Below, piece by piece: positions 2,792 through 51,957 of a stretch of DNA of 56,600 nucleotides; position 1 is the first letter of the stretch; each line of letters begins with the position of its first letter. Location: the NCBI GenBank assembly GCA_001938485.1, contig MQRK01245662.1:17595-74194 (forward strand). The letters are read 5' to 3'. A model generated the notes under the pieces. The model was given only the letters and a program-made list of their open reading frames with translations, made no database searches and was not told where the DNA came from. Position numbers and translations under genes: made by a program. The DNA comes from Girardia tigrina. Its lineage: Eukaryota.

Positions 2792-2828
2792 GCCTGAAGA
2801 TGGGGGAAAATCCACCGAAATATATTGC
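2792..2828 (+). ncRNA. Minimal type-I hammerhead ribozyme, PLE-associated (HHR1)
   Basis: gc-CTGAAGA-T-GGGGGA aaa TCCACC-GAA-ATATAT-T-gc: intact core, stem II, palindromic stem III, 2-bp stem I. Confidence 0.8.
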
Positions 2829-2916
2829 AATAAAATTTGATTTTAATGGCGTTCTTAATTAATTTAAAACTATTTACTTTATTTAAATTTTAATATGAAT
2901 TTAAATTTTAATAATT

Positions 2917-4320
2917 TTAAATTTGAAACGATTTAATATTTATTATTAACCATTTCTTGGTTTTCCCAGTTTTGATATCTGATCTAATCTGTTTTATCAC
3001 GTCATTATCTTTCTGCCATTTGAATCCTTTGGATTCATCGTCTAACGCTAGAATTCTTGTTTTAACTTTACCCTTCTTAGGTTCCTCATGCATAGTTTGA
3101 CATTGTACACACATTTCACAGGAATTTCTCTACATTGCATCGGCGTTAGAGTGTTTTTCACCTTTCCGGTATTCCATTGTCATATCCAACCCACTTAGAA
3201 AGTTTATCCAAATTTGAAATTTCGAAGTGATTGAGTTCTTTTTTCGTCATCATAAAGGTAATGGCTTTATGATCCGTTCTTAATAGAAATTTCTTGCCAG
3301 ACAAATAGTGCTTGAAGTGTTGTGTAAAATAGTAGATTGCCAACAGTTCTTTTCTCGTAATACAGTATCCCAATACATGTTTGTTCATTTTGTGGGATCC
3401 ATACGCAATCACTCTTTATCTTCCATACATATCTTTCTGCGATAGCACCGCGCCAATGGTGTCAAAACTAGCGTCCGTGTCCAATATGAATTCTTTTCCG
3501 AAATCTGGGTATTGTTGTATAATCTAGGTATAATCTGGGTATAATCTAGTATTGTTGTATTGATTATCTTTTCCTTTAATTTTTGAAACGCTTTGTTGCG
3601 TTCTTCCGTCCATATTAGCTTTTTTTCTTTATTCTTTCCGCATAGTCCTTCCAATACTTTTGAATACTTTGCATAATCTTTTAGGAATTTCCTGTAATAG
3701 TTCGTTAAACTTAAAAAGCTTCTCAAATGTTTTACACATGAAGGATTCTGAAACTTACTAATCGCAACAATCTTTGTCTGATCTGTTTCTATGCCATCTC
3801 TACTGATCACATATCCCGAAAACTTTGTCTTTTCAACCAAAAAGTGACATTTATCTGGATTAATTCTCAGACCCCATTGCTTTATTTTACTAAATACGTG
3901 TTCAATTCGTCTGATGTGTTCTTCCTTGTCTTTTGCAAAAATTAATATGTCGTCTAAATACACAACTGCCTCTTTCCAATTTAATTCACTCAAAACTCTT
4001 ACCATTAGTTCTTAAAACGTTGCTGGTGCCGCTGCAATTCCAAATGGCATTCTCTTGAAACAGTATTGGCCATCCTTTGTTGAAAATGCTGTTTTGACTT
4101 TTGATTCATCTTCAAGTTCCACTTGATGGTATGCGTTTCCTAAATCGATTGTGCTAAAATACTTTGCTCCATTTAGTGTATTCAGCATTTCCTCAACATT
4201 TGGCATTGAGAATGCAGGTCTAACGGTGATTTTATTCAATTGTCGAAAATCTACACACACTCAAATGTCAATTTCTCCTTTTTCCAAACACTAACTAGAG
4301 GGGAATTCCGTGGTGACCTG
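2917..4320 (-). mobile_element. Decayed Ty3/Gypsy pol fragment (RT, RNase H)
   Basis: SPxNSPLV, CVDFRQLN, YFSTIDL, MPFG, VYLDDIL, ELLAI and LRTDHKAI motifs across frameshifted ORFs 4012-4260, 3409-4005 and 3158-3412. Confidence 0.93.
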
Positions 4321-4333
4321 CATTTTTTCTATT

Positions 4334-4860
4334 TGAGGAATGTTTTAAATGTTTGATGTTTTGTGTTTGAATGTTGTATGTTGATTTAGAATTGTGTCTC
4401 TCCTACCCAGATTGATGATTGATATTTGAATTCTTATTATCTAAAAAAATGTAATTTATTTTTTATTTCAAATAATTTTAAAATTTTAAATAAGATAATT
4501 TAGTTTTACAATTTGTAATAAATAAATCAAATTAAGATTTTTAAAATAATAATTAAACATTTTAATTTTTATCCAATAAGTTTTGAGTAAATATTTTAAT
4601 AAATTAACTATTTCTCCATTTGCTAAACAAATTATAAGAATTAACTAATTAGTCAATTTAGTTTACCTTGCACTCGTATGAAAGTTTTGACAAAGATTGT
4701 CTTAAGGAAGATCCAAATTGTTTTGTAAATAAAAATCCGAAAATTCAAATCGGTGTTATTAATATTCATTAATATCGTTTTTTTCATAATTTCGATTAAT
4801 ATTGTTTAGTTTTTCCTCGAAATGTTTTGGTTTTCGATAAGGTTTCACTAAAACTTCACT
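4334..4860 (+). repeat. Unclassified dispersed repeat terminus, copy A
   Basis: TGAGGAAT at 4334, TGTGTCTCTCCTACCCAGATTG at 4393-4414, then an AT-rich tract alignable by eye to copies C and F. Confidence 0.65.
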
Positions 4861-4898
4861 AAAAATAAATTTTAAATAAAAGTATTAAAAAATAAGTT

Positions 4899-6500
4899 TG
4901 TTTTAATTAACAAGATAAAATAAGAATTATTTATCTTTTTATCAAATTAAATATAAATAAGTAAATTAAAATAAATAAAAAAGATAAATAAGTTAGTTAG
5001 AATAAAAGGGTAATTTTTATACTGAAATAATTAGATTATTTTAGAAATAAATAGAAAAATTTTTAAATTAACGAAGTAATATAAAAAGAGGCTTAATTAT
5101 TTAATTGAACGCCCATACTGACTCTAAAAAAGAAAAGGAAACAAGAAAATTTTTATTAAAGCCAGAAATCATTTCTCGTAGAACAATTTTTATTTCCCGT
5201 AGAACAATTTTATTGTTGTGAAAATTAGCTCAACCGCATAACAGTTGATAAGAGCTAATATAAAACGTGAAATCGTCGTTAACAAAGTTGACAGAAGACA
5301 GAGAACTGAAAACTGAAATCTGAAAGTACGAACAGTAGAACTTAAAATATAATTTATATATTTCCGTAAATATATTTTTATATATTTTTAGTAAAATTCT
5401 CTGTGGGCAAAAGAATCATCTTTTCTCACGCTACCAAAAATAAAAAATCCTAAATAGGATAAGTTGCTTTTAAATATTCTTGATTAAATCACCGATCAGA
5501 TTTTAGATTGTATATAACCAATAAATATTTAAATACAAGTCTTGTTTGTTTTAACTTCCTTTCACATTTTAAAAACTCACCTTGTATCCTAACAAATTTG
5601 GCGCCCAATGTGGGCTCGATTTTGAAAAATATTAAATATTTGAAATTTGGTAATTTTGTTTTCAAGTACAGGCAGATCACAAATAATACATGTAGTGAAA
5701 TTTACATAAAATAAATTGTAAAAATAGATTATACACGTACAATTATCACACGGAGTATAACACGAAGTATGTCCAATAACGAGAATAAAAATTAAAAACC
5801 TCAATTAAAATCATTAGAATTTTTACCTTTAGAGCCAGTTTCAGGAAAGCCTGAAGAATTTGATAAGTATTTTAAGGATTATAAAAGCTATGCAAACGCG
5901 AGCGGTTGGGGAGAAACCGAGATGGCGCGTAGATTGCCTCTTTATTTAAAGGGATATACCATACAAGCTTTTAATGCATCCGAGCCAATGACGACTATTG
6001 ATAAAATTATTGAGAAATATAGGTCTATTATAGTTGTAGACGTCGAATTAGGAAAGATATACGTGCATAATTTTAGAAATAGGAGGCAGAAACAAAATGA
6101 AAATGTTACGGAAAATAGTTTTGCGCTAAAAGAATTAGTCGAAAAAGCATTTGGAAAGGATACTAAAGTGGGATCAATAATTATTGACCATTTTTAAATG
6201 GTATCCATGGACATATTAGAGATGCTCTAGTTTTAGCAGATTATAAGGATTTTGATGAATTGATACAAAAAGCCCGACTGGTTGAATTGAATAATTTGAA
6301 TAAAAGTAAACCTATAGAAATTGGAGCAACAGGCCCAATATTTAAAAATGTAGATTCGATAAATAATCAACAGTCCGGTGGCAGGGCTGATGGCAATTCC
6401 TCGAATCGATATAATAATAACAATAGAAATAATTCATACCAAAATGGTGGAAATAATTACTGAAAAAATAATCGAGAAAATAGTCGAGGATATAGTAATT
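4899..6500 (+). mobile_element. 5' part of an LTR retrotransposon: LTR, tRNA-Lys PBS, decayed gag
   Basis: LTR ends ...CCTAACA at 5594; PBS TGGCGCCCAATGTGGGCTCGA from 5599 matches the tRNA-Lys(CTT) 3' end; gag-like frameshifted ORF 5769-6500 (YANASGWGETEMARRLPLYLKG). Left LTR boundary approximate. Confidence 0.8.
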
Positions 6501-6924
6501 TTTTAAACGTTTAAACGGTCTTCGTTTAGCAAATTAAACGTTTAAAATTTTAATTATAAGCTTCATTAAAAACAATACCTTTTCTTCAATACAATACATC
6601 TCGTTTTTAAAACTTTTGTTTTCGAAAAAATTTAGAAAGTTAAATATAATTTAAATAATTTTACATCTATCAAAAAAATTTACCGGAAATTTTGATGCAA
6701 TTCTCAAATATGATATTAATGCCACTTTTCATATTTTGTATTTATAGTCCCACAAAAAGCTCAATAGATTGGGACAATGTGTTCTTTTCGAATGAATATA
6801 CCTTAGGTAGCGTGATAAGTTTCAAGAGTTTTGAAATACGAACTTAATAACTATACGCTCGTTTATAAATCGCTAAACGTCTTAAAAATTGAAAACGTTT
6901 AAACGTGAAACGTGCACACCTCTA
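6500..6924. mobile_element. hAT-like MITE remnant, one intact end
   Basis: Right end ...AAACGTTTAAACGTGAAACGTGCACACCTCTA; AAACGTTT subterminal repeats near both ends. Confidence 0.5.
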
Positions 6925-6952
6925 TATACAAGTGAATTGATTATTAATTAGT

Positions 6953-6991
6953 GACCTGAAGATGACGATAGATCCGTTGAAATATATTGTC
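6953..6991 (+). ncRNA. Minimal hammerhead ribozyme (HHR2)
   Basis: gac-CTGAAGA-T-GACG atagatc CGTT-GAA-ATATAT-T-gtc; 3-bp stem I gac/gtc. Confidence 0.8.
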
Positions 6992-7883
6992 TATAAATAT
7001 ATTTTTTTAATGGATGAGTGTTGTTTTTAATATATTTATTGTTTTTAATTTTCTTTACTTTAGATTATTTTATGATTCGTATGTGACTTTTGGGTGTGGG
7101 AAAAATGTTTTTTTTCTAAAGTTCCTCGTGAGTCATATATGACTCATTGGACAGTTAAGATGTTAAATTCAGAATTATTTATTATTTTAAAACGATTATA
7201 ATTTATTACCCATGTGACTACTATGGGTCGCTAGGGACTCGAAGTCAGCTTTAACCATGTACAGATATATTATTTTATAATTTAAGCTACTGAAACCTAA
7301 TGATATTCACGAAGTACTATAGCAGAGTATGACTCTTATAAAACCGTTTGTCACTAAACACTGAAAGTTATACTGTTCAAAAAATATTTAAACTAATTTT
7401 GCTTGGGGTCATTAGACATCTCAATAGTACTTAGAATTTTCAATTGATTTCTATCGACAACCCTCAACAAATAATCTTTCCCTTCCTTTTTGATTTTAGT
7501 TTTTTACCGGCCGTCAATTTCATTATTTATAATCACATTTAATGAGACGTCAACTAAAGGTTGAGCACCATATGTAAAAACCAATTGAAACATATTTCTT
7601 CTAAATAGTCAATAATTTCTTATACATATAAAACTGAGTAATATCAACATTTAATCAATAATAAAGAGTAATATCTATATTTAATCAATAACATCACAAC
7701 AGATCGCACATCTTCGTAAAAATCAAAATTTCATTCATGACAACTAAGTATCACCATAGGAAAAGAGAGAACCGCACATTTACGATCCAAAGTGAACAGA
7801 CAAATTCACTTTTATATATCATCACCAAAAAAAGAAAAGTGCTCACTAAATGTTAACTTGAAAATTACTTAAATAGTAAAATC

Positions 7884-8048
7884 TCAGGCGTCATGAGTGC
7901 TGGTAGTACTAGCATCCGCGAGAGCGGAAGCTGCAGCAGCTTGGCGAGCGATTTGTAAGTTCCTAGCGGCTCTAATGGCACCAATGCTACTCCTGTGCAT
8001 ATCTTGCCGCTGATCATTTGTCATTCTGAACGCATCGATCACCCGTAT
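7884..8048 (-). CDS. PMCA: PMCA alternative terminal exon, distal (IRVIDAFRMTNDQRQDMHRSSIGAIRAARNLQIARQAAAASALADASTTSTHDA*)
   Basis: ttttcag acceptor, phase 0. IRVIDAFR matches the second half of the PMCA calmodulin-binding domain (IRVVxAF). Confidence 0.85.
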   Translation of the reverse strand: MRVIDAFRMTNDQRQDMHRSSIGAIRAARNLQIARQAAAASALADASTTSTHDA

Positions 8049-8349
8049 CTGAAAATGTTTAGGAAATATAATGCTACTGAAAGTAAACTGGTTTGATTTA
8101 CTGAGAGATCAATTTGTTACATACTTGCATGCTACCCTCAACTATAAAAAACCGTTTACCAAGCATATCCAGTACTCGCAGAAATCATCAACTAATAGAT
8201 TTAAATACAGATATTAGTAATCATGCTCATATGCAGATGAAGAGGAAATATGGCTACTTCTAGTATCGGTCAATCATATACACATAAGTGTCAAAGAGGC
8301 TAATCCTCTTCCACACAGTCTCTAAGATAATGATGAAAATAATCCAGCA

Positions 8350-8676
8350 TCACGAGAACTCAGTGCTGAGACTCCTTGTCTCTTTTAGTCGTGAAATATT
8401 TAAATGAGGCAGTTGATGATGAAATTGCTGATGCAAATTTGGATTTTGATATGAATTGAAAAATTGTTGTGATCTAGTAGTGTTGGCACCAAGTAGATCA
8501 TGTTGGGAGTTTTGGATTGAACAATGCACTGGACTAACGGAATCGGCCGACAAAGGGCGCGGATGCGACAGACTCGTCCTCAATCGCAAGCGTCTTTGTT
8601 GCCAAAGCTGTAACTTTTGTTGGTCAAAAGAATGTCCTTCCTCCAACGTACATTTGAAAGCTCGCACGACTTTCAA
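8350..8676 (-). CDS. PMCA: PMCA alternative terminal exon, proximal (LKVVRAFKCTLEE...SLSTEFS*)
   Basis: ttttag acceptor at 8677-8678, phase 0. LKVVRAF matches the second half of the CaM-binding domain; 108 open codons. Confidence 0.85.
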   Translation of the reverse strand: MKVVRAFKCTLEEGHSFDQQKLQLWQQRRLRLRTSLSHPRPLSADSVSPVHCSIQNSQHDLLGANTTRSQQFFNSYQNPNLHQQFHHQLPHLNISRLKETRSLSTEFS

Positions 8677-9467: not shown

Positions 9468-11402
9468 TTTAAATTGAAAAGGTTCTTTTGGAAACTCAAT
9501 GCATCAATTTATAAAAATTATTTTAGGAAATATATATGTTATGACCCCCTCCATCAAACATCCCCTGTCCATACTAACTAGGCGTGTTTTATAGCAACTG
9601 CTCTATGAACTACTCCAAGTCAAAGGTTTTGTGTTAAATGTTCGTTCATGGAAAAACAATATTAAACAGAGAATTGAAACAGAACAGAAATTGAAACCCA
9701 TCTAGCCTTCAGATTAGGATTCAGGGAATGAATGGGGGACCATTTCACTCAGAAAATACCTACAATAAGTCTTTTTTGAAGCAAAGCTTATAAAAAATCC
9801 CTATAAATTCGAAATGTACTGTAAATGATCTCTCATCACAAGGTCAAAAAATGTATCTTACTTTACACTTATTAAATCCTTTATGATTTTGATTGTTTTC
9901 CTCATTAGACATATTTTAGTGCGTCCCTTAAGAGAGGATATGTAAGAGCGAGATGTGATGAATTAACAATTGTCTATGATTCTTTTATATGTATAATAAA
10001 ATAAATTTCAGGGACTTGTTGATTGTATGACTGTAATCGGAGTTAGAAGCGGATAAAACAGTTTTATATATAAGAAAGTTACCATGACTAAATAAATAAT
10101 AAATCTTTTATTTGACTTAAACTATTTATTATTATCAGTCATCATTAAAATTTATGAATAACCAAGAGACAAAAAATAACATTTAATAAATTCTATACAT
10201 ATTCATTGATAAAATTAACTAAATTTGAGTAACAAAAACCCTAATAAGCATAGTATTTTTTCTAACCTTATATCATAATTTTAAACTACATTAAAATTCG
10301 ACTATCAAAAATTATATTGTTTTCTATTATATGGCAGAGATTGCATAAACGAACAAAGTGATTCAACCAATCAAAATAAAGCATTTGGCAAAATAGGTGC
10401 CATGACCAGCCACACTGACCCGTCTCAATTACAGAACACGCATTTCATTCGACTGATAATTGTAACGCAAAGAACACTTTCGAAGAATCATAAATAAACT
10501 AAAATTCTTTTACTATACAGTATAACCTCTACATTTGGCAAAAAATGAGAAACGCCAAAACAGAGTTCTTAACATCTCCATTATCTTTTTCTCCAATTTT
10601 ATATTCCAATAATGTATCAATTTCACTCTAAGTAATCATAAAAAATCTTCTTCCTCCATAAGATCTGAAATATCTACATTAAAATATTAAAACTCAATTT
10701 AGAGTGTTTCGATTGATTTTCAAAAGATTGTTTTTTAAAGGTGCGTAAAAGGGAAATTTAGCCAATTTCAGTTTTTTGCAATCATCAAATATAAAATTTC
10801 ATATCATATATGTGTATGTATCAGGAATGAAAATGTATATTGCTTGCAAGATTATCCCTCCCTTTATATGTTTATTGTTTTTACCTATACATAGATGTTT
10901 ACTTATTCCTTTCAATCTATTGTCGATACCATTGTAGTACAGCTTGATTTATTACTGACTTTGTTGTCTCTGTCTGGCAAGAATAATAACATTGTTTCCG
11001 GTGCTGAGATTGTACTGAAGATCAAAGATGGAGAAAGAGTGTGTGTAATTGCTTTTATTTGTGGTAAAATATACGCAAATAATATATATGTATTATCTTT
11101 TTCATTCCAATGTTCAATATAAGCTAACAAGTCTAAAGATTGTAAGATGAGTCTAGGATCAAATATTAAAAAAATCTACAACTCAAACCGAAAGTATTGG
11201 AATAAATCATTCACAGATGAATAAGATAGGTTTTATTTAGCAAAATTTTATTCATATAATTATGAAAATAATACGTAATGGCTAATTTTAGTTTAACCAA
11301 ATATTAAAAAGAAAAAACATTTTCAAATAGAGCCTTTATTGCATGATTGATTACATAATCACCTTTCTCATATATAAGCTGCAAAAAGCCAGTGTTAATT
11401 TA

Positions 11403-14849: not shown

Positions 14850-15830
14850 AAACTAGATGAATCAGAAATCTCTGAAGGTTTCGATTTGTTATGCGAGAAG
14901 AATTTTTCTGAAATGTTTTCAACCTTATTTATACATTTATCATGTGAAATGTTTTATCATCCAGATGCCAACATTTATTCCGGATTTTAATAATAGACTT
15001 TAATATTCGAGTTAAAAAAAGGATTATTCGAATTGAAGAAGTTCATTCGGATACACCTATCAAGCATATTGAAAAAAGAAAAAGTAGTAAACATATTTTT
15101 GATTAATCCTGCAGTCATCTTAAAAACGCATTATGACTCCCTTTTTTTGTGAAAAAGAGCGATTTTTCAGACGAAGTACCCTCAATATCTGATTGGATAA
15201 GAAATATTTTTTAATTATCTAACATAATCCAAATAGGGTTGAAGTTTTATTACAAAATACATTTTGGATTTTATGTTTTTTTCTTTTAAAAATAATATCA
15301 CAAACATTTAAATCTAAAATTTTTTTGTATTAAATCTCCAACCGCATTTGGATTATGTTCGGATATCATATACCAATTTACAGGTAGTGTTTGAAGTGGA
15401 ACATACATTGGAGAGACGTGCCGTCATCTATGTAAGAGAATTCAAGAACATGGTTGTAATGGGGGTGGAAGTAATATTGCAGAAAACAGAAAGGGTTGCA
15501 ATTCGATCACATATATACACATAAATAACTTTTAAATTCTGTGTCCTCGTTTTACTAACTATTGCGAGAGACATGTGAATCACTATATATCATCATAAGA
15601 TAAAAAATAAAGCATATCAGATCTCTAGATCCTAAAATTAATGAGCAAACAGGACTCTCGACAACCCTATTAAACATCGTTTGATAACATAACAATCCAC
15701 TGACTACATAATCACTGCTTCCTATATATTTTTATTGAGACTTGACGATGACGGTTATACCGTCGTAATTAATTGTACTGAAAAATAAAAATAATTTTTA
15801 CAAATTGAGCGTTTTCCTATTGATTTATTC
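14850..15830 (+). mobile_element. Penelope-like element remnant (GIY-YIG endonuclease end plus degenerate HHR)
   Basis: 15371-15450 reads YQFTGSV*SGTYIGETCRHLCKRIQEH; IRSLDPKINEQ at ~15615; hammerhead at 15740. Left boundary approximate. Confidence 0.75.
15740..15776 (+). ncRNA. Degenerate minimal hammerhead ribozyme (HHR4)
   Basis: ac-TTGACGA-T-GACGGT tat ACCGTC-GTA-ATTAAT-T-gt; perfect stem II, two core substitutions. Confidence 0.65.
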
Positions 15831-31387: not shown

Positions 31388-32596
31388 TTAGTATGGGGAA
31401 AATGCGGGTTCTGGATCAAGGCCGGGGGGAGGCCGTTGCCATGGTAACGGTCACGGTTATCATAGCAACGGTTCCGATCACTTTAGAAACGGTTCCGGTT
31501 ACCATAGCAACGGTTCCGGTTCACTTGGAAACGCTTCTGATTGGTTCCAGGTTCCTTAGCAACAGTTCTGATTGGTCCTTGGTTCCCTAGCAACGGTTCC
31601 GGTTCACTTGGTGACGGTAACCAAGGTATTGGTTACCATAACAACGGTAACCAAGGGACGCTTTTCATTGACAACGGATACAGTGATTCAAGACGGTTGT
31701 AACCATGGTAACGATTACCGTATCCATAGCAACCGTGACCCTATCACTAAGGAAAGTAGAAAAAAGTGCTAATCGATTGTTGTACAGTGCCCAGATGTGC
31801 TAATCGATAATTTTTAAGTGTTAATCGATATTGCACATTGTGCCGCGCATTTCTAATGTGCTAACACAGTTCTTTTCAAGCTGCACATGTGCAAAAGTGC
31901 AAAAATCTATACATGAAATTTTTCAAAAGTATTAGTGTCAAAAATCGATATCATGTGTTTGATGCACATTTAGATTCTCTATCTGAATATGTAATTAGAA
32001 ATTTCATATATTGATAACTTTTCCCTATAATTAACATTTTCGTATATATATGAAACCCCTGTGATATATGTATGTTTTTTACCATCAAACAATTCCACAT
32101 GAATCGCTCAATGTACCTCATCATCAATCACAAGTACCATGGTTACCGTAACCAAGATACATAACTTTTTATTTTACAAGGGTATATAAGGTGAAGAATG
32201 CAAAATATGAAAAATCTGTTTGGACACATGGAGCCATAGGGAGTAACTCATATATGAATAGTCAGAATATGATCTTAGATTTTTGAAAAAAAATCAATAC
32301 TTAGTGCTCTTTCGAACATATGCACATTATGTGTGCAAATATTATATTATAGATATGTATTATATTATGATATTATACTGTTATCAACCAATATCGTATT
32401 AACCATTCAAAACATTACCGTGTCCTAGGAGATATTGTCATGCATCCATCATGTCAATGTATTGCATTCATTATGTCAATACAAAGGTGAACATGTAAAA
32501 AATACAGAAAATATTGAATAATATATAAATATTACAATTAATATATATTACAATGCCTAATGAGCGTTATATATAATAACATTACGCTATATGAAA

Positions 32597-32647
<51 letters not shown>

Positions 32648-34640
32648 ACATTACACTGTCTAAATATGTAAAAATAATTATATAGTTTTTTAGTAATTTG
32701 TTTTAATGTGTCACTTGTAGTAAATAAACACAAGGCGGGATTTTGAATTTAGAATTGCAGATTCTTCAAATAATGAACAGGGTGGGACTTTGAATTGCTA
32801 ATTCTCTAAATATAGCCGATATTTGGTACAAAATCATGTCAATATGTTTTACACTTTCCTGGCTAGGTAGCCAGTCCTGGCTATCTTAGGATAGGCTAGA
32901 GTACTCCACTGTATTCTTTTTCAATGGAAAATGTTGAATAATGTGCTGTAAGGAGCCTAGGTTAGCCCATGCTAGCCTAGGCTAGCTTTTGATCAATCCA
33001 ATTTACCTACCATATCATCAATATTAGTATACAATCTATGGAAGTCATAAATGATTATGGTCAACATATTAATACTATGGATATATATGGATATGAGCGA
33101 TATGTAGTCTGTTATGTAATAGAAAGACGTGCAATTGCGCAATTATTCAACCCTTTCGTTGACTGTGATTTCTTTATGTTATGTATATCAATATATGACT
33201 AGAGGTAATTATATGTCTTTATCATTGAAAAAAATTTATATATTACATGATTTTACATGAAAATCATATATTATTCTATGTTTTTCAGTAATTTATGTAA
33301 ATTTTTATATATACATTCTTACAAAACCTATAAATAGTTTACACACTACATATAGATTATAGCCTCCCTAAGCTTACCTAGATCCTGTCTAGGCGTAGTG
33401 CAGCCTAGTGCTACATATAACACATATATTGCATTAACTTTGATGAATCAAGTCTCAATGTCTTTTATGGTTGATAAAGTATATTTTATGGTTGATGATA
33501 TGCTGATAAGGTATATGGTAATTTATATGGTTGATAGTATGGTTTTTAAGGTATTTTGATGGTTAATATGTCAATTTTGATGATTGTTGAGGTATATTTG
33601 ATGGTTAATAGTATGGTTGATGATGTATATTTGATGGTTGATGATATGACTGGTAAGGTAGTTTGATGGTTGATATGTCAATTTTGATGGTTGTTGAGGT
33701 AAATTTGATGGTTTATAATATGCTTGTTGAAGTACATTTGACAGTTGATAGGTATATTTGATTATTTTTATGGTTGTTGAGGTAAATGTGATGGTTGATG
33801 ATATGGTTGTTAAGGTATATTTGATGTTTCATATGCTGATTTTGATGGTTGATAGCATGATGGTAATGTTTGGTAAGGTAGTTCTTTTAGTACTTTATAT
33901 ATTATTCAGCATTTTCTGTATTTTTTACATGTTCAGCTGTGTATTGATATGATGAATGCAATACGTTGACATGATGGATGCATGACAATATCTCCTAGGA
34001 TACGGTAATGTTTTGAATGGTTAATACGATATTGGTTGATAACAGTATAATATCATAATATAATACATATCTATAATATAATATTTGCACATATAATGTG
34101 CATATGTTCGAAAAAGCACTAGGTATTGATTTTTTTTCAAAAATCTAAGATCATATTCTGACTATTCATATGAGTTATTCCCTATGGCTCCATGTGTCCA
34201 AACAGATTTTTCATATTTTGCTTTCTTCACCTTATATACCCTTGTAAAATAAAAAGTTATGTATCTTGGTACTTATGATCATGGTACTTAATATATTAAG
34301 TTATATTAAGTACCATGGTTAAGTACCATGGTCATGTAATCATGGTACTTGTGATTGATGATGAGGTACATTGAGCGATTTATGAGGTATTGTTTGATGG
34401 TAAAAAACATACATATATCACAGGGGTTTCATATATATATATACGAAAAAATCGAGTTTTCAGCACTTTTTTGAGAATTTCAGAAATGTTCGAAAAAATC
34501 GATATTTCAGCACCTTTTTCGAAAATGTTGATGTGGAATTTAAATGTACGTATATGGGTTTCTATTCAAGTGCATCAGCACATTTTTGATATTCTGCTTC
34601 CTTGTACCTCTAAAATCGATGTGCATTTTCAATAAAATAT
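31388..34640. mobile_element. Non-coding foldback or Polinton-TIR-like element with internal ~500-bp inverted repeat
   Basis: Highly similar inverted arms at ~32037-32535 and ~33890-34450; GC-rich X-box array at the left; degenerate ATGGTTGAT repeats at 33467-33880. Family not identified; outer boundaries approximate. Confidence 0.6.
31435..31733. promoter_or_regulatory. Cluster of RFX X-box-like motifs with CCAAT boxes
   Basis: GTTGCCATGGTAAC, GTTATCATAGCAAC, GTTACCATAGCAAC, GTTCCTTAGCAAC, GTTCCCTAGCAAC, GTTACCATAACAAC, GTAACCATGGTAAC, GTATCCATAGCAAC, plus two CTGATTGGT. Confidence 0.6.
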
Positions 34641-40266: not shown

Positions 40267-40546
40267 CTAGAATTTTAGATAAATAATTGTTAATTGAGTA
40301 TTAATAATATTTTTTATTTTTATTATTTGTTGTTAATTTATTCAAATATAAAGGATACTCACAAATTTAAATTTAAACATTCAAATTATCTTTTATATTT
40401 ATATCAATATAGACTCAACAACAATACATATTATGGTTTAAATGAATGAATAATGATCCTTATTTCATGAAGAGAATAATGATATTATTATCAGATACAT
40501 CCATAAAGCAATCTTCTTTTTGTACTCAAACATTCTTTTAACATAT

Positions 40547-42485
40547 TGTGGTACCGACAGCCGGACCGAATGGCGACGGCCAGCACCGCTTAGACGTGCC
40601 GGGACTTGGTGCCCGAGAAGATCGCCGTATCGGTTTGAGTGCATCGGTGTGTCGATCGGGTCCGGCAACCATCGGTCGATACACCATGGGATGTCGGTCC
40701 TGCAATCGGCTCGCGGCGGTTCCGAGTTGTGTCTCGATCCCACGTGACGATCGGTTCCGTTAAGGTCGACGGTTAGTTCGATCGGTCGATCGATTTGTTT
40801 TTTATCGTTCAAGAAGATGATATCATAACACATCGTTCAAAACACGAAATTATAGACTTTTATTTTATTTCATTTAAAATATTATTCGATCCAACATTAT
40901 TTAAACAATTGTGTGATCAAATATTATTTAAACAAAACTGTAATGTTATTTTGTGTCATATTCGAACACCACATGAGCCCCCCCCCCCGAAGAATGCAGA
41001 GCATGGGGGTTGTTGCATTGTGGAGGGCTGCTGGAAGTAGGAGGGGTTCGAGAATGAATATTCCTCGAAACGCGGTGTGTTGCAGTGTTGTGTTGTTCAT
41101 GTTAAGTTTTGTTGGTTTGTTTGTATGTGTGTTATGTGTAGTGTTGTGGAGGTGTGTTGTGTGGAGTGATTGTTGCGTGATGTTGTTGTTGTTGTAGTGG
41201 TGTGTGGTTTGTTTGTGATCTGTTGCTGTGTGATGTTGTGAATGTGTATTATAGTTGTGTTGATGGTGTGAGGTCGTTCTGCGTATGATCTTCCTTTGAG
41301 ATGGTTTCTCGTGATCTTCGTGACTAATGGGCGCGTTGACATTGTAGCTTTCTTTTTGGGGGAGTTTTTGTTATCCGGTTTTGCCTTGGTTTCGTCCTGG
41401 ATCGAATCTTCCAAGCGCAGACATGGCTTGAGCTTGCAAATATTCACGGTGGCCTCCTTACCAAATTTTAGCTGTGTTGTTATCTAGTGCGATGGTTATG
41501 AGCTTATGTGGTCCTGTGTAGCGACTTTCTAGAGAGTTCGTGGTTTCCTTTTGGAGCCAGCGAACTTTGATGTTGCAAGTTCTTTCGGGTCGAAGATGTG
41601 CTGCCCATCGGGTTTTGGTGATGTTCTGTTGGCTTGCGAAAAGTGTTCACGCGCCGTTTTTAACATCTCATTGTTTCTTGGTGCCCCATTGAAGAATAAC
41701 TCGTCGTTTAGTGAGGTGTTTGAGCCGAAGAGCATTCGTGCGGGCAATGCATATCTGCTATGGGGAAATTTTCTCCAGCCTAGCAAAATGAGTAGTAACT
41801 GCTTCACCCAATTGTGTTTCTGTGCTAACATTCTGAATGAGTTCTTCAGGGTGCGGTGGAACCGTTCTATCAGGCCGTTGGTTTTTTGGTGGTATGCAAT
41901 GTCCTGATTTTCTGGATGCCCAATCGTTTAGTTAGGTCGCTGAATAACTCTGACTCGAATAATAACTTTGACCTGTTCGAATGCTACAATCGACCAAGAT
42001 CTTGAAGTGTTCCAAAAAAGCGGTCCCAATGATTGGTTGTGTCACACCGGAAATGGTGAATGTCTAAGTGAACTGATTTCTCAATTGGGGCAACGTGATA
42101 GTGAGCTGTACAGTGCAGTGCGTGTAGATGGTTGTACCGTTAGTGGTGATGAGGTACTGATGGAGTTGTTTCAAGAGGCACATGAACTTGTGAGGAATAA
42201 TGGAAACAGCGGATCGATACGCCATCGGATGTCGGTCCCGCGATTGGCTCGCGGCTGTTCCGAGTTGTGTCTCGATCCTCACTTGGCGATCGTTTCCATT
42301 TCGGTTGATGGTTTGTTCAATCATTCGATCGATTTGCTTTTTATCTGTCAAGAAGACGATATCATAACACATCGTTCAAAACACGAAATTATAGAGATTT
42401 ATTTTATTTAATTTAAAAAGTTGTGTGATCAAATATTATTTAAACAAAACTGTAATGTTTTTTTGTTTCATATTCGAACACCACA
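40547..42485 (-). mobile_element. Internally deleted Ty3/Gypsy element: partial 5' LTR, protease, integrase, PPT, 3' LTR
   Basis: 3' LTR 40547-40973 (TGTGGT...ACCACA); poly-G PPT on the minus strand at ~40977; integrase AYHQKTNGLIERFHRTLK and RYTGP; protease SAVSIIP...QPIIGTAFL; truncated LTR ~42210-42485; TSD CATAT/CATGT. Confidence 0.92.
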
Positions 42486-43269
42486 CATGTATTAGAATAT
42501 AAATTTGTTTTATGAGTGTAGTCACTCTTATTATTATAGATAAAATCAAATTGGATCTAAAATTTCAATTTCGTTTAATCACAAAAAACAATTCAATCAA
42601 TAAAAAAAATTATTTTAACAAATGGCGTTTACTTTACAAAGAAACTAATTGACTGAATTTAATCGGATATCTTGATTTGATTTGATTACATAAAGACTAA
42701 TTAAAATCAACACTAATATTTATAAATATTCAAATCAATAAATATTAAAAAAAATACATGTATATTTTTATGTATATCAAAAATTCATTTTGTTTTTAAG
42801 GATTATTATATCTTGTATAAAAATGTCTATGTTTAGTTGATTTTCGTCTAATTCTTTTTAAAAAATGCAACTTGTTTTCCAAATCGAAAAACTAACAGTA
42901 AAAGTCAACAATTAACAATGGAGATTCAAGTTTAGATGGAAAACATTGTTTCATTAACATAAGCAAAGTAATAAAAACTTTCGAAAATAACATTCCTATA
43001 TTTAAGGATGTAACAGGAAAACTGTTAATTATTTTTTTTTATTTTGTTATTTAATATAAAAATATAAATAAAATATTTAATATATTTTATAATTTTCAGA
43101 CACACAAAAATGAAATAAAATAGAGAGCGATTGTCAAAATATTTTATGAATAATAATAATAATAATAATCCTAATGTTAGTAACAACACCATTAATCATC
43201 CAGGGGAAATAAATAATTTAGGTGAACGAGATTTTCTGGTTGATCCGATCAGGGAAATATTGATCAGCA

Positions 43270-46122: not shown

Positions 46123-46539
46123 CTGATAAATAAAAAATATTTACCATTTATTAAGATTTATTTTTTTGAAATACACTTCATAAAAGTGACTTTAGCTTAT
46201 TTCATTTTCGATAACAAATATATCATATCACTTTTGGTAACTCGTTTTACAAAAGGAGACATAATATTTAAACTGTGCCTGAGACAACAAAATGTCAAAA
46301 GTTAAGCAAACCAAGAACTTTTTCCTATAATATCATATGCAAAATCATCAAACATTTACACAAGTCAGTTTTGAAATCGCAAAGATGTAAAATAATTTTC
46401 AAAATCAAATTTCTATGGATTTGTATCGATCAGAGAAACTTATAGAAATCGGTTAAATTTAAAAAGTTAATGCTTAATAATGGCAACTGCTTTAACAAAA
46501 ACAATCGCTAAATTTACCAAAACATCTTTAAATAATTAT

Positions 46540-46710
46540 TCCGGAACAGATTCAACATCTACTTCAATTATCCCTTCCCACTTGTTTGGCAGCAGGTCAA
46601 ATCCATCTTAGAAACAATAAACTCTTTTAAGGAGGCCACAAAGTCTTTAAGATGTTTTAAACATTGATCGCGATCCAATTTATCATATTCTGATTAACGA
46701 AAGCGTTTCT
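46540..46710 (-). mobile_element. Mariner transposase C-terminal remnant
   Basis: DQCLKHLKDFVAS...DGFDLLPNKWEGIIEVDVE resembles mariner C-termini. Confidence 0.55.
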
Positions 46711-46907
46711 TTGGGGAAAGTACAGATCAAAAGTACTCTGTACTATCTGATCAATGGCACTTTAAAAGCATTCTGTAAAAGCTTTTAGTTATTACAATCA
46801 AAGTCCGATCTTTAAACTAAGGAATAACTGGTGAGAACATATCGTAATGGTATTTCAAGTATGTTAGTTACGTTAATAAAATATGAACTATAAGTAAGGA
46901 ATAAAAG

Positions 46908-46994
46908 TTAGGTTAGGTTAGGTCTTAAGACCTAAACCCTAACCCTAACCCTAACTCTAACCCTAACCCTAACCCTAACCCTAACCCTAACCCT
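46908..46994. repeat. Interstitial telomeric repeats: (TTAGG)3 head-to-head with (CCCTAA)9
   Basis: Read directly; perfect 18-bp palindrome TTAGGTCTTAAGACCTAA at the junction (46918-46935). Confidence 0.92.
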
Positions 46995-48331
46995 TAAATC
47001 AAACAAATTTCGAAAGAATTTAATAATAATTTCGCTGAATCCAGATATTTCAAAAAAAATTAAAATTATATTAATTTCGTAAAATATATTTTTGACAATT
47101 CGATTTTTACTTATTTTTTTCATTTTTAATTCACTTTTTTATTATTTTACAAATTATGCATTTTAATTCCTTTGGTTTAAATTTATAATTTAATTCATTC
47201 GATTTATTTTTTATTCTTAATTAAAAAAATATATCGCTTACTTTTTATATTAATAATTGGGATTTAAAAATATCAAAATTTTAATTTATTTAATTCTTAC
47301 TTTTAATATCAATTTTCAATTTTTCAGCTATTTAACGTCTATTTTGACCGCTACTCTTTATGATATATAAACTTCATTTATGATTGATTTTTTTGTTTTA
47401 TAAGAGAGATAAAAAAATTAATAAATGATAATCTTTTTATGATTCATTATAAATTTGGGAACTTTCTTATTAAATAAATATATAAAAAACTTTAATTAAC
47501 TTAGATAAAAAGAAGGACAAAGTAATAATTTAGATCACAAAAACAGTTTACGTCTTTTGAAAGAAGCTAATAAATCGAATAATAATCATTTTTAGAAAAT
47601 AATTATTTGACAATGATTCATTGAGTCAATTATTCGAATCGATTTGCCAAGTCATCGGTCAATCAGTGCGTCAGCAGAGATATCGAGGCCAGAAAGAAAT
47701 TCTGAAGTCAAATTGATTGACCAATCAGAGCGAGTATAGTGGACGATTGGATTTAATTATCTCAATTACGAAGTTTTTAAACTCCAGTTTGACAATATTT
47801 TACGATTTGCTGATTTCTGATTAACGATTTTTTTTAATTTTCAATATTTATTGAAATTTTGAATATCTGAATTTTTGTATTCACTTATTTAACTACTGTT
47901 TAGAAATAAAGAATTTTAATTGATTCAACTTTTAACATTTATTGAAAAGATTTATTCTTTAAATATTTTCGGATTTGTCTGTATGAGCTTGAAATTTTAT
48001 TATCGAATATGTCTGAACAAGTGTTTTTGAGTGACAATTTTTATTTTTTTTTCTTTCGATTTGATTATCAACAAATTGATCGTAGTTGTTAAAAATGAAA
48101 ACATAATTATTTAACGAAGTGATAAAATCGAAATTATTGTACAAGTTTATTTATAGAAAATTTTGAGCATTTTTAAATAAATTGTTACGATTTTTTTCTT
48201 TGAAAAGAAAATATTATTTTGTTGTTGATCGAATTTCAATTCTTTTTGAAATCGACTTCGTTTTCTTGATTTGATTATGATTAATGATAAAAATGATGTG
48301 AATTATTTATTGACCACCGAAATTTACGTCT

Positions 48332-49130
48332 GTGAGGAATATGCGGCGTGTAATTGTTTTTTTAGTGTTTAAATGTTGTGTGTTGATTTGGGATTGTGCC
48401 TCTCCTAACCAGATGGATTATCAATATTTTAATTCTTATAATCTGAAACTAATTTATTTAAATTTAGATTTAATATCCAAATTTTGAATTTTTATTATTG
48501 CAACTATTAAATAATTTTATTCATTTTATTTTTGTAAATTTTTAAATAATTAAAATCAAATTAATGTTTAAAAATGACTATAGAAATATTTTATTTAAGC
48601 CAATAAAATTTAAATTAAATATTTTTTAATAAAATAATTTTATCAAGTATAGTTCAGATTATAATGAGAGATATTAAAAATTGAGTGAAAGCAATACTAT
48701 TGATCCTCATAAAGATGATAAGAAATGTGAATGTAATAAATGTTCTGTCAAATGTGAGAGTTCTCTTAACAATGTTAACATATTTTTTGTATGTTTTCTG
48801 TTCAAAACATTTGATATGTTTTCTACCTGATTAAATTATATGTTTGATAGTCCGAACAGATTTTGGTTTCATTTATTCCAGACAATATACACCTTGCCAT
48901 AAAACAATCATGAATTTAATTTTCATGTTTCTCACTTGAAAACAATTAAGTAACCTACAAAAAAAGTCGCATTGATATATCATATAAATATGTTATATTT
49001 TAAAAATTTTTGGGAAAAAGTCTCATGCGATGCATTATTAATTAAAGCGGTTAGTCCAACAACTAATATCCAACCTTGTGACTCATCAACTTTGTCGAAA
49101 GTGTTTACAATGTTAACATATTTTTTTGTC

Positions 49131-49163
<33 letters not shown>

Positions 49164-49260
49164 AGCTTAATAGCTAGGATCAGAAATACCTGATGATGAC
49201 GGATATTCCACCGAAATATATTGTATCAAAAAAAAGTTTTTTTAATTTCAATAGTGTTTG
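48332..49260 (+). mobile_element. Terminus motif copy F joined to PLE endonuclease tail and hammerhead (candidate non-autonomous PLE derivative)
   Basis: GTGAGGAAT at 48332; TGTGCCTCTCCTAACCAGATGG at 48396; YFKNFWEKVSCDALLIKAVSPTTNIQ at ~48996; HHR at 49186. Confidence 0.65.
49186..49226 (+). ncRNA. Minimal hammerhead ribozyme (HHR5)
   Basis: atac-CTGATGA-T-GACGGA tat TCCACC-GAA-ATATAT-T-gtat; 4-bp stem I, stem II partly mismatched. Confidence 0.8.
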
Positions 49261-49769
49261 TTATTTATAATAAAATACATTATTATTTTTAATCTGGCAA
49301 GCAAGATGTTTTCCAAAATATGTTTTTCTTTAATTTTAAATGATTTAATTGAAAATTGCTGAATAACGAAAAATAATCCTTGAGAACTGTCATGTTGATC
49401 TTTATTAGATATTGGAATCGTATTTCCTTTATTTTGTGTCAAAGAGGAGGAGAAATAATACCGGGACAGGAAGAGAGTTAATTGGAAAATAAAAAAACAG
49501 ATCTGAGAAATATAATACATATTTTTACAGTCATTCTGACACTCGTTGAGCGTTTCCTATTTCTTCTAATTTTCTTTGCCAAAATAATTAATGGATCAAA
49601 AAATGAAACAAATTCATAAAAATGGCAATTCTTTCAAATAATCTAAAACGCCATTTAGTAAAGCGCCATTCTGAAAAATTATTAATTTGACACTTTTTTT
49701 CGTAATATATATCTGTGGATATCGTGGCGCAAAATTTTTGGATTTTAAATTAAAACGATTTCCTCTAAT

Positions 49770-51020
49770 TGCAACGGATTATTTTGATTTTCAGTAGTAC
49801 TAATGAAGTTATGGCCTCGTTTGATATTGTAAATCTTTTCATTAATGTTCCTTTGTTGGAGACAATTGATTTATGTTGTGATCTTTGGAAAGCTAATACT
49901 GGTGAGCATGTCAATATCAATGAAATATCTTTTCATGAATTGCTGACTTTTGTAATATTAAGTGAACATTTTCAATGATAATTGGTACAAACAAATTGAT
50001 GGTGTTGATATGAGGTCTGCATTAGCACCAACGCTTTCTTCGTTTTTTTTCGAAAAATAGCATGTAAATTGTATGTTGATAATATTTTTCTTATTTTCAA
50101 AGACCGTAATCATATGTTGCCCTTTCTATCGTATATGAATTCTTTACATCAAAATATTATTGATATTATTCTCAGTTGATTTTCAAAAGAAAGTTTTTTA
50201 CCGTTTTAGATTTGTTAATGAAGATGAAAGGTAGTCATTATGAGACAGAAATTTAGAGAAAGAAGACGGACACTGGGTTATATAAAACTCATAAAAGCCT
50301 TTAGCTAGCTGAGTATGATAAAAGGTTTGAAATATAAATCTTGATCTCTGCCTTCAACATCTGTGAAATCTGATGGTAGAATAAATAAGTTAACCGAACT
50401 TTTGCATATTTATGGCTATTTCAAACCACTTCTTTAAAAAATTAAGAATTGAGACAATAGAAAACTTAATAAATAAAGAATTCTAGAGAAAAGATGAATT
50501 AAAACCCTAAAAAATATCTTACTGAGATTTAGGTATTGGATAAACTTTATTGTTCCCTATTCAACTCGTATTAAAAAACTTAAGTCGTCTATTTAAATTA
50601 CAAAAACTTAAATCAAAATTTATTTAGTAATAAGACTCCAACTCCTTAGTTTGTGTTCCAAACTTGTTTATCAATTTTCTTGTAATCGATGTAGTGCTAC
50701 ATACATTGGAGAGATTTCTCGTCATCTCTGTAAGCGGATTCAGGATCACAGACGATTGGGTAATGATAGCAATATTGCTGGAAGTTTGTAGGTCAGATTT
50801 GACAATAAACAGTTTTAAAATATCGTGCAGTTATTTTAAAAAATATTGGGAAATGGTCTCTTGTGAGGCACATTTGATCAAATCACTTAATCCATCAATT
50901 AATGTCCAAACACGCCTCTTCTCCATTTTGTTGAAAGTATTTAATTAGCTATTACATAAACTGATTTTGAAAATATTGAATGAAGATAGTGAAAATTCCA
51001 CTGAAATATATCGCAAAAAA
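49770..51020 (+). mobile_element. Decayed Penelope-like element (RT plus GIY-YIG endonuclease)
   Basis: MASFDIVNLFINVP, WYKQIDGVDMRSALAP, YVDNIFLIF, RKKTDTGLY, VYQFSCNRCSATYIGEISRHL and EAHLIKSLNPSINVQ in broken frames. Confidence 0.9.
50978..51014 (+). ncRNA. Degenerate minimal hammerhead ribozyme (HHR6)
   Basis: ATGAAGA-T-AGTGAA aat TCCACT-GAA-ATATAT-C-gc, directly after the PLE ORF end; C3 is mutated. Confidence 0.6.
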
Positions 51021-51920
51021 TAGGAAAATTTTAAATTAATACAATTTTCAGATTCAAACTGTGTTTTTGATTAAATTAGTAAGAAGAGCAATTTTTAAAT
51101 ATCGAGTTCCTGCTTAACTCTTATCCATCAACTGAAATAACAAAAGAAGATTTCCCGTTAAACTGAAAGTAAAAAAAAACGTAGAACGAATAATTAATTA
51201 TCTCTTTCAACTAAAATGATAAATGTTTACATTAAATGTTTTCATTCTACAGAAAATTATAATCAAAACAATGTGTAAATAACCATTGAAACCGGAAGGA
51301 GAGAGAAAAGGAAACTTGTGTTCAACCTTTGATGGAAGAAACATTTTTCCCAGTTTTAGAAATCGTGCAGTAATTTTACAAGTACAAATTTTATTTTATT
51401 TTTAATTATAATTCGTAAAACGATCCGTTTGCGTCGATTTTACTGAGACAGTCGGTACTATTAATGGGGAAAAAAGTAAACAAATATTTTTCAAATGAGC
51501 GCATGTTTACATAATCGTCAATATGTCGACGTAGAATGTCCTTTCTTTAAAGAAGAATGTGAATTATTAGTTTGCTGAGAAGCAAATCCTCGCGAGTCTT
51601 CCTGGAGTTGTCCTTTGATTGGTTGTCGAGCTCTTCCTCGGCCTCCCAACCCGAGTGTGTTCGACGTCAGGGGAAAATTTTCTCAAATCTCTCTCAATAC
51701 AGACAAAACCCAAACTTGTTGATATCAAAACTTATAATTTCTAAGCCAATATAAAATTTTCAATTGAATTTCAAATGAATATTTTCATATCTTTCAAAAT
51801 ATTTTTTTTACGAAAATCAATTAAGAAATTATTATTTAATTTTATTTTTAATAATTTAAATCGAAATTTTTATTAAATAAACAAAATTAAAAAATGCCAT
51901 TTTTTGGAAAAAATTTTTTT

Positions 51921-51957
51921 ACAATATATTTCGACGAAATATCAGTCGTCATCAGGC
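51921..51957 (-). ncRNA. Minimal hammerhead ribozyme (HHR7)
   Basis: Minus strand gc-CTGATGA-C-GACTGA tatt TCGTC-GAA-ATATAT-T-gt. Confidence 0.75.

What the first reader, a model, noticed from the sequence alone, without database searches (positions are those of the whole stretch)
2792..51957. Family of seven minimal hammerhead ribozymes with covarying stems and palindromic stem III
Seen: seven loci (2792, 6953, 11403, 15740, 49186, 50978 on +; 51921 on -) share stemI-CTGANGA-Y-stemII-GAA-palindrome-H-stemI'. Stem I covaries (gc/gc, gac/gtc, gt/ac, ac/gt, atac/gtat), stem II differs in sequence but still pairs, and stem III switches between two palindromes (ATATAT, ATTAAT). At least four sit directly after a GIY-YIG endonuclease tail. 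Established: Penelope-like elements carry minimal type-I hammerheads whose palindromic stem III lets them cleave as dimers. Inference: this is an all-A/U stem III, mostly AUU-cleaving variant with an extra pyrimidine after A9, and the two palindromes would define non-cross-dimerising subfamilies.
Basis: partly seen in the sequence, partly recalled or inferred. Interest (0 to 1): 0.8.

Follow-up and report, generated by a model that had tools for sequence, protein, structure and literature searches.

The report
Penelope retrotransposon minimal hammerhead ribozyme copies

Summary
All seven loci carry a 33-nt CUGANGA / stem II / GAA / 6-nt palindrome / H17 motif. The strict pattern gives 5 hits against 0.04 expected, and the covariance-model E-values are 1e-12 to 1e-15. 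Two copies have inactivating core changes: 15742 (U3, U13) and 50980 (A3). An eighth copy at 56578-56545 (-) carries an ACAUGU palindrome and a GUC site.

In the 1.43-Gb source genome the motif occurs about 54,000 times (control about 3,800). Four perfect palindrome classes account for most of them:
- AUAUAU: 12,619
- AUUAAU: 12,521
- ACAUGU: 10,139
- ACGCGU: 2,642

Stems I and II covary strongly: 85.7% of cells pair, against 28-60% when partners are slid.

In near-intact copies the motif lies 74 nt after the stop of an RT + GIY-YIG ORF, about 33 nt after a TATA box, and 8-35 nt before the element's 3' end. Four window copies follow endonuclease remnants; the others are 5'-truncated.

All of this matches the Penelope-like-element minimal hammerheads of Cervera and de la Peña (2014), including the extra nucleotide after A9 and the palindromic helix III. 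The "all-A/U variant" is a sampling effect. Non-cross-dimerisation is plausible but untested, and stem I contributes to it too. The scan has noted the same thing elsewhere in this genome (for example s1-701277, s1-689054). This is a new member of a known kind, of low interest.

The parts
2794..2826 (+). Minimal hammerhead with an intact core, AUAUAU palindrome and AUU site; predicted cleavage after 2826. Family A copy with one stem II mismatch relative to the family consensus.
   Evidence: 63.3 bits; family consensus seen
2827..2861 (+). 35-nt 3' terminal stretch ('tail' region) of the family A element. Homology to the family starts about 22 nt before C3, so this copy is a roughly 90-nt 5'-truncated solo insertion.
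   Evidence: comparison with the family A copies
6956..6988 (+). Minimal hammerhead with an intact core, AUAUAU palindrome and stem I gac/gtc. A TATA-like box lies at 6923-6929.
   Evidence: 55.4 bits; family partner L039
11405..11437 (+). Minimal hammerhead with an intact CUGANGA/GAAA core and AUUAAU palindrome; position 10.1 is mutated to A. A TATA box lies at 11371-11378.
   Evidence: 58.5 bits; family partners L043/L055
15742..15774 (+). Decayed hammerhead copy (C3 to U, A13 to U) with an AUUAAU palindrome.
   Evidence: 53.3 bits
15296..15571 (+). GIY-YIG endonuclease remnant of a Penelope-like element, upstream of the 15742 hammerhead.
   Evidence: tblastn E 1e-18; Pfam GIY-YIG E 5e-4
48999..49073 (+). 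Endonuclease C-terminal tail remnant, upstream of the 49190 hammerhead.
   Evidence: tblastn E 1e-5; paralogy with 50634-50945
49190..49222 (+). Minimal hammerhead with an intact core, AUAUAU palindrome, stem I auac/guau and two stem II mismatches. TATA box at 49158-49165, extended into a (TA)n run.
   Evidence: 61.6 bits
49802..50921 (+). Degraded Penelope-like ORF (RT motifs through the GIY-YIG endonuclease), flanked on both sides by hammerheads (49190 and 50980). This is the pLTR-ORF-pLTR layout.
   Evidence: tblastn E 8e-30 and 8e-32; motifs read
50980..51012 (+). Decayed hammerhead copy (C3 to A) with an AUAUAU palindrome and H17 = C.
   Evidence: 59.1 bits
51923..51955 (-). Minimal hammerhead with an intact core, C instead of U after A9, and an AUAUAU palindrome. 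It is convergent with the 50980 copy.
   Evidence: 56.7 bits
52385..52516 (-). GIY-YIG endonuclease remnant upstream (on the - strand) of the 51955 hammerhead.
   Evidence: tblastn E 2e-4
56545..56578 (-).
   Evidence: CM 24.6 bits, E 0.001; sequence; same family as 10,139 genomic copies

Best explanation
These are the minimal type-I hammerhead ribozyme motifs of Penelope-like retrotransposons (PLEs). In this genome the motif sits in the 3' untranslated / pLTR region. It lies 74 nt after the stop codon of the RT + GIY-YIG ORF, about 33 nt downstream of a TATA box (in the AU-palindrome families), and only 8-35 nt before the point where inserted copies end. Because reverse transcription starts at the 3' end and often stops early, every 5'-truncated copy longer than about 70 nt carries the motif. 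This explains the roughly 50,000 mostly solitary copies and the eight in this window, which come from at least five families. Four still have endonuclease remnants, and the others are truncated or too diverged for the endonuclease to be detected.

The inferred mechanism follows published work on such motifs. One copy cannot close helix III. Two copies pair through the 6-nt palindrome at 15.1-16.1, and through intermolecular stem I, to build a double hammerhead with two active sites that cut after H17. This is probably helped by the element's own protein, and it would serve to process PLE transcripts.

Shown here: the motif, its covariation, its abundance, its palindromy and its position in the element. 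Inferred: dimer cleavage and its biological role. The copies in this window are decaying fossils; each carries 1-3 pair-breaking or core changes relative to its family consensus.
For: Motif above chance: 5 hits against 0.04 expected.

Genome census, with the reversed-pattern control in brackets: 53,846 (3,771) for the general pattern. By palindrome class: ATATAT 12,619 (19), ATTAAT 12,521 (41), ACATGT 10,139 (5), ACGCGT 2,642 (0). G at position 17 gives only 2,941 (843) and no amplified family.

Covariation on 61 distinct copies: 85.7% of cells paired against 28-60% when slid; 121 double-change cells against 32 or fewer; 0 of 500 shuffles reach the observed value.

A PLE ORF lies upstream in family A copies. 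RVT_1 scores 2e-9. The GIY-YIG block reads ...VYEFSCNGCNATYIGET... and the ORF stop lies at -74. Relatives are PLE-type RTs of flatworms, rotifers and shrimp.

Window remnants of RT/EN lie upstream of four hammerheads.

A related PLE in another organism's contig is flanked by two hammerheads of the same build (L105).

A TATA-like box lies at -32 to -39 in 31 of 61 distinct copies, against 9% in the control.

The literature describes the same features: PMC4209133, PMC6765202, PMC8557442, PMC11167929.
Against: No Rfam hammerhead model reaches its threshold. The best is RAGATH-1-hammerhead at 12.5 bits, E 6.8.

Nearest-neighbour energies put homodimeric double hammerheads at -0.4 to +6.8 kcal/mol relative to two monomers, so dimers are not favoured on their own.

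A genomic 'fossil' test found no insertion whose 5' end starts at the cleavage site: 25 tail copies have a non-T base before the tail and 664 have T, and all 25 are hammerhead variants, none with unrelated flanking DNA.

Published work reports low in vitro activity, and cleavage is dispensable for PLE insertion in vitro (PMC4209133, PMC11167929).
Confidence: 0.9

Rival explanations
1. [quoted passage not shown] Cleavage would be incidental or vestigial.
For: The motif lies 8-35 nt from the 3' ends of insertions, which is next to where reverse transcription would begin. No insertions start at the cleavage site. Dimers are energetically marginal. Published data show protein-assisted cleavage and insertion that does not need cleavage (PMC11167929). 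PLE clades without hammerheads proliferate well (PMC8557442).
Against: Every family keeps the full catalytic core, including C3/G8, GAAA and H17 not G. The palindromes have been exchanged for other perfect palindromes. A simple binding site would not need either feature.
Confidence: 0.12
2. The solitary copies (2794, 6956, 11405, 56578-) are non-autonomous retrozyme-like elements that make small circular RNAs, rather than truncated PLEs.
For: Animal retrozymes carry type-I hammerheads and have been argued to derive from PLE pLTRs (PMC7229834; bioRxiv 10.64898/2026.07.22.740005). These four copies have no detectable RT/EN upstream.
Against: There are no short tandem units. Spacings are 0.9-4.4 kb and the flanks are unrelated. 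The 2794 copy matches family A only from about -22 to +35, as expected for 5' truncation. Truncation points in other copies are scattered: -29, -22, -18, -6, +2.
Confidence: 0.04
3. The motif is a chance match in AT-rich DNA, or another small RNA such as a C/D-box snoRNA (the motif contains UGAUGA).
For: Weak Rfam snoRNA matches at E about 1-5.
Against: Counts are 14- to over 2,000-fold above the reversed-pattern controls. Both stems covary. There is no D box or terminal stem, and the motif is tied to a retrotransposon ORF.
Confidence: 0.01

Closest known systems
Minimal hammerheads (min-HHRs) of metazoan Penelope-like elements (Cervera and de la Peña 2014, PMC4209133; Lünse, Weinberg and Breaker 2016, cited in PMC6765202)
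   Same: Type-I topology and a short stem I. An unpaired nucleotide lies between A9 and 10.1. The G10.1-C11.1 pair is conserved. There is no helix III hairpin but a palindrome at 15.x-16.x. The motif sits in the pLTR next to an RT + GIY-YIG ORF. There are thousands of mostly solitary copies per genome, grouped in covarying families, with opposite-strand pairs.
   Different: Only details differ. Stem II is 5 bp here, against 7-8 bp in Schistosoma. Stem I is as short as 2 bp. There are four co-existing palindrome classes, two of them pure A/U with AUU/AUA/AUC sites. A TATA box lies about 33 nt upstream in the A/U classes.
Anolis Poseidon PLE (PAc) hammerhead and 'tail' (PMC11167929)
   Same: The hammerhead lies close to the internal start sites of reverse transcription. 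Two classes of 3' ends are seen here, about +8-10 and +35 after the cleavage site, which resembles the optional 30-40 bp tail.
   Different: In PAc the ORF starts inside the hammerhead; here the hammerhead follows the ORF stop by 74 nt. The two 3'-end classes rest on few copies.
Non-LTR retrozymes of animals (PMC7229834)
   Same: Type-I hammerheads with a weak helix III that act as dimers, and a probable PLE origin.
   Different: Retrozymes are short tandem repeats that yield circular RNAs. No such tandem units occur here.
Rfam hammerhead families (RF00163, RF00008, RF02275-7, RF03152)
   Same: The CUGANGA/GAAA catalytic core.
   Different: None of the curated models scores these copies above noise, because helix III is missing.

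Membership tests
Hammerhead ribozyme (minimal type I, PLE class) | Catalytic core C3-U4-G5-A6-N7-G8-A9 and G12-A13-A14, followed by A15.1...U16.1 | tested here: met
   Intact in 6 of 8 window copies. 53,846 genomic matches against 3,771 in the control.
Hammerhead ribozyme (minimal type I, PLE class) | Helices I and II supported by compensatory changes | tested here: met
   61 distinct copies: 85.7% of cells paired against 28-60% when slid; 9 of 10 pairs show double changes; 0 of 500 shuffles reach the observed value. The alignment was fitted to the model, which favours the structure somewhat.
Hammerhead ribozyme (minimal type I, PLE class) | Cleavage-site nucleotide H17 is not G | tested here: met
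   Families carry U, A or C at position 17. G17 gives 2,941 matches (843 in the control), with no amplified family.
Hammerhead ribozyme (minimal type I, PLE class) | Extra unpaired nucleotide between A9 and 10.1, and a G10.1-C11.1 closing pair | tested here: met
   U in 39 of 40 distinct variants and C in one. G-C at the closing pair in 46 of 57 scored copies.
Hammerhead ribozyme (minimal type I, PLE class) | Self-complementary 15.1-16.1 segment that allows an intermolecular helix III | tested here: met
   Four perfect palindromes make up 37,921 of 53,846 matches. In an unselected listing of 100 matches I counted about 81 palindromic, about 10 single-mutant family members and about 9 noise.
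Hammerhead ribozyme (minimal type I, PLE class) | Self-cleavage after H17, as a dimer | not testable with these tools
Energies make dimers marginal.
Hammerhead ribozyme (Rfam curated models) | Score at or above the gathering threshold of an Rfam hammerhead model | tested here: not met
   No hit at gathering threshold. The best relaxed hit is 12.5 bits against a threshold of 56.3. This is expected for motifs that lack the helix III hairpin.
Penelope-like element | [quoted passage not shown] | tested here: met
   On the L061 minus strand, a 369-aa RT part (RVT_1 2e-9) overlaps, in another frame, a 286-aa part with the GIY-YIG block, i.e. one frameshift between them. Homologues carry RVT_1 plus PLE-associated domains.
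Penelope-like element | Hammerhead-bearing repeats (pLTRs) flank the ORF, in direct or inverted orientation | tested here: met
   Window 49190 / ORF remnant 49802-50921 / 50980. L105 has an inverted pair around a related ORF.
Penelope-like element | Optional 30-40 bp 3' 'tail' from two reverse-transcription start sites | tested here: inconclusive
   Family A copies end at about +35, and two end at about +8-10 after the cleavage site. The sample is too small, and no more genome sequence could be fetched.
Non-LTR retrozyme | Short (about 170-400 bp) tandem units, each with a hammerhead | tested here: not met
   Spacings are 0.9-4.4 kb, and flanks are unrelated beyond about 20-40 nt.

The most novel reading that the evidence does not exclude
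The palindrome at 15.1-16.1 together with the intermolecular stem I could form a family-specific 'dimerisation code'. Co-resident PLE families in one genome would then cleave only with their own kind, or with the other pLTR of the same transcript. In the A/U families, the TATA box would place the transcription start at the 5' edge of the upstream hammerhead. The capped 5' copy and the complete 3' copy would then differ in competence.
Probability: 0.15. Interest if true: 0.5.

Novelty: new member of a known kind. Interest (0 to 1): 0.2.

Why it matters
It adds one more genome, probably a flatworm-like invertebrate judging by the named protein relatives, in which Penelope-like elements have spread tens of thousands of minimal hammerheads. 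The four co-existing palindrome classes, the TATA spacing, and the absence of insertions starting at the cleavage site are useful small data points for an open question: what these ribozymes do for the element. Nothing here changes the current picture.

Tried and rejected
- Rfam at gathering threshold on the whole window, and at E up to 10 on three slices, found no usable hammerhead hit.
- DNA and protein self-comparison of the flanks showed no shared unit behind the roughly 4.3-kb spacing of the first four copies. They belong to four different families, so the regular spacing is taken as coincidence.
- I first suspected that the ATGGCG about 25 nt downstream was a start codon of a small gene. 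I rejected this: the element ends there, and flanks diverge after it.
- Unconstrained RNAcofold dimers were uninformative, because any hairpin can open into a duplex. I replaced them with an explicit evaluation of the double-hammerhead structure.
The 5'-boundary test was therefore done by pattern counts and was negative.
- The organism was not identified. The best protein relatives are unnamed metagenome contigs at 63-70% identity.
- Masked N runs were left untouched.
Full report
**1. The observation**

Reading the seven loci shows the same 33-nt layout in each, in this order:
- 2-4 nt that pair with the nucleotides following the motif (stem I)
- CTGANGA
- one extra pyrimidine
- a 5-bp stem II with a 5-nt loop
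- GAA
- a 6-nt A....T palindrome
- one H nucleotide

The copies align without gaps. A strict pattern finds five of them against 0.04 expected from dinucleotide shuffles.

Two copies have lost core positions: 15742 has U3 and U13, and 50980 has A3.

On the seven copies alone, 78.6% of the proposed pairs form, against 24-47% when partners are slid.

A covariance model (R1) later found an eighth copy at 56578-56545 on the minus strand. It has an ACATGT palindrome and a GUC site.

**2. How common it is**

The window is part of a 1.43-Gb assembly in 255,254 contigs. The model's best 150 genomic hits all score 58-67 bits, and many are identical.

Pattern counts, forward plus reverse, with the reversed-pattern control:

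| Pattern | Matches | Control |
|---|---|---|
| General motif, any four inner letters | 53,846 | 3,771 |
| A/T-only inner letters | 28,876 | 847 |
| ATATAT | 12,619 | 19 |
| ATTAAT | 12,521 | 41 |
| ACATGT | 10,139 | 5 |
| ACGCGT | 2,642 | 0 |
| G at position 17 | 2,941 | 843 |

Four perfect palindromes therefore account for about three quarters of the net signal. In the unselected list of 100 matches, I counted about 81 with one of these four palindromes. About 10 were family members with a single change, and about 9 were unrelated noise.

No amplified family has G at position 17.

**3. Structure**

Aligning 61 distinct copies from the window and 49 genomic loci to the model gives:
- 85.7% of cells paired, against 28-60% for slid partners
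- 121 cells with changes on both sides, against 32 or fewer for slid partners
- 0 of 500 shuffles reaching the observed covariation

Distinct families use different pairs:
- Stem I: gc/gc, gac/gtc, tgtt/aacg, attg/caat, gt/ac, gaa/ttc
- Stem II: GGTGG/CCACC, GACGG/CCGTC, GGCGG/CCGCC, GATGT/ACATC, GGGAT/ATCTC, GCCAC/GTGGC

These keep G10.1-C11.1 in most copies and a U after A9 in nearly all.

The alignment was fitted to the model, which inflates pairing a little. The family-to-family exchanges are plain in the raw sequences.

**4. What carries it**

- In the most abundant young family (A), the sequence upstream of the hammerhead encodes the end of a GIY-YIG endonuclease. The stop codon lies 74 nt before C3.
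- One near-intact copy (L061, minus strand) has a 369-aa RT part (Pfam RVT_1, 2e-9) and a 286-aa part that overlaps it in a different reading frame, so one frameshift separates them. The second part carries the GIY-YIG block.
- Its relatives are PLE-type reverse transcriptases. The named ones come from Schistosoma, Trichobilharzia, Sparganum, a rotifer and a shrimp. The best hits are unnamed contigs at 63-70% identity, so the host species stays unidentified.
- Searching the window with this ORF finds four remnants: EN at 15296-15571, EN tail at 48999-49073, RT through EN at 49802-50921, and EN at 52516-52385 (-).
Hammerheads 49190 and 50980 flank one degraded ORF in the classical pLTR-ORF-pLTR layout.
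- The copy at 2794 matches family A only from about 22 nt before C3 to 35 nt after H17. It is a 5'-truncated solo insertion.
- Truncation points in other copies are scattered, as expected for target-primed reverse transcription that stops early.
- A related PLE on another organism's contig (L105) is flanked by an inverted pair of hammerheads of the same build. They have a U after A9, an ACATGT palindrome and stem I gg/cc.

**5. Position in the element**

- A TATA-like box lies 32-39 nt before C3 in 31 of 61 distinct copies, against 9% at random places. It is present in the A/U-palindrome families but not in the main ACATGT family.
- If the box is used, the transcription start falls at or just before stem I. 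This is an inference.
- Downstream, family A copies stay alike for about 35 nt and then diverge into unrelated DNA, or continue into the 5' part of the next unit. Two copies end after only 8-10 nt.
- This resembles the two reverse-transcription start sites and the optional 'tail' reported for a lizard PLE (PMC11167929). My sample is small.

**6. Does the genome record cleavage?**

If cleaved RNA were copied to its 5' end, some insertions should begin exactly after H17.
- For family A, the 25-nt tail sequence is preceded by T (H17) in 664 copies.
- It is preceded by another base in 25 copies. All 25 are hammerhead variants (H17 changed, or a 3-nt insertion), not unrelated flanking DNA.
- There is therefore no sign of such insertions. 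This neither proves nor excludes cleavage.

**7. Dimers**

In a double hammerhead both the palindrome and stem I pair between the two copies. I evaluated that explicit structure with nearest-neighbour energies:
- Homodimers lie between -0.4 and +6.8 kcal/mol relative to two folded monomers.
- Heterodimers between families lie at +5 to +23 kcal/mol.
- One pair of ATATAT families with compatible stem I is the exception, at +0.9 kcal/mol.

The specificity comes from stem I as well as the palindrome, and even matched dimers are marginal. This fits the low in vitro activity and the protein assistance reported in the literature (PMC4209133, PMC11167929).

**8. Comparison with what is known**

Cervera and de la Peña (PMC4209133) described minimal hammerheads in the pLTRs of metazoan PLEs 'from cnidarians to arthropods'. 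They reported:
- thousands of copies per genome, mostly solitary
- grouping in covarying consensus families
- a conserved G10.1-C11.1 pair
- palindromic 15.2-16.2 positions
- pairs on opposite strands
- weak cleavage only as dimers

Reviews (PMC6765202) and later PLE work (PMC8557442) repeat this picture.

Every feature of the present finding falls inside it. The only local details are a 5-bp stem II, a very short stem I, four co-existing palindrome classes and the TATA spacing.

Rfam's curated hammerhead models do not score these copies, which explains why they look unannotated.

**9. Limits**

- No RNA evidence could be obtained.
- Masked N stretches, and GC-rich stretches next to them in a few fetched loci, were left alone.
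- The scan has already noted hammerheads 180 times in this genome, including the same reading elsewhere (s1-701277, s1-689054).

**10. Verdict**

It is a new member of a known kind, of low interest. The one idea still worth a bench test is family-specific dimerisation.

Noticed in passing
window 972-2377 (+): TRAF-like gene pieces: RING finger plus coiled coil at 972-1583, and a MATH domain at 1823-2266 (Pfam 3e-26). The family A PLE fragment begins only at about 2772, some 400 nt further on.
   Followed up: partly
window 3158-4260 (-): Remnant of an LTR-type retrotransposon pol (RVT_1 5.5e-14, weak RNase H-like hit), just downstream of the 2794 hammerhead on the other strand.
   Followed up: no
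window 31950-32490 (+) versus 33936-34630 (-): An inverted duplication of about 0.5 kb; the translated pieces are 87-98% identical across strands.
   Followed up: no
window 40400-42600: A locally GC-rich stretch (41% against 28%) with internal direct repeats at the protein level.
   Followed up: no
window 6923-6929, 11371-11378, 15723-15729, 49158-49165: A TATA-like box 32-39 nt before C3 is conserved across otherwise unrelated A/U-palindrome families: 31 of 61 distinct copies against 9% in the control. In the 15742 copy the box is only 19 nt away, because of a deletion relative to its family consensus. The box would put the transcription start at the 5' edge of the hammerhead.
   Followed up: partly
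G000 contigs C21358, C43231, C62123: Head-to-head inverted pairs of family A tails, always 77 nt apart. Two copies truncated at about the same point inside the hammerhead (near A9) are joined back to back. These may be one amplified unit or haplotype duplicates.
   Followed up: no
G000, 14 places listed: A sub-family with a 3-nt insertion (GCG) directly after H17, which duplicates the first stem I nucleotides.
   Followed up: no
window 49140-49165, 56480-56500; L024: (TA)n runs adjoin several copies, and one family A copy ends directly in a (TA)n run. This fits the (TA)n target preference reported for some PLE clades (PMC8557442).
   Followed up: no
window 51990-52060 (-): A short tandem repeat (16-nt unit, about 3-4 copies) lies between the endonuclease remnant and the 51955 hammerhead.
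   Followed up: no
L015, L027, L062 (fetched loci): GC-rich stretches unlike the rest of this genome lie next to masked N runs. I did not analyse, compare or search them further.
   Followed up: no
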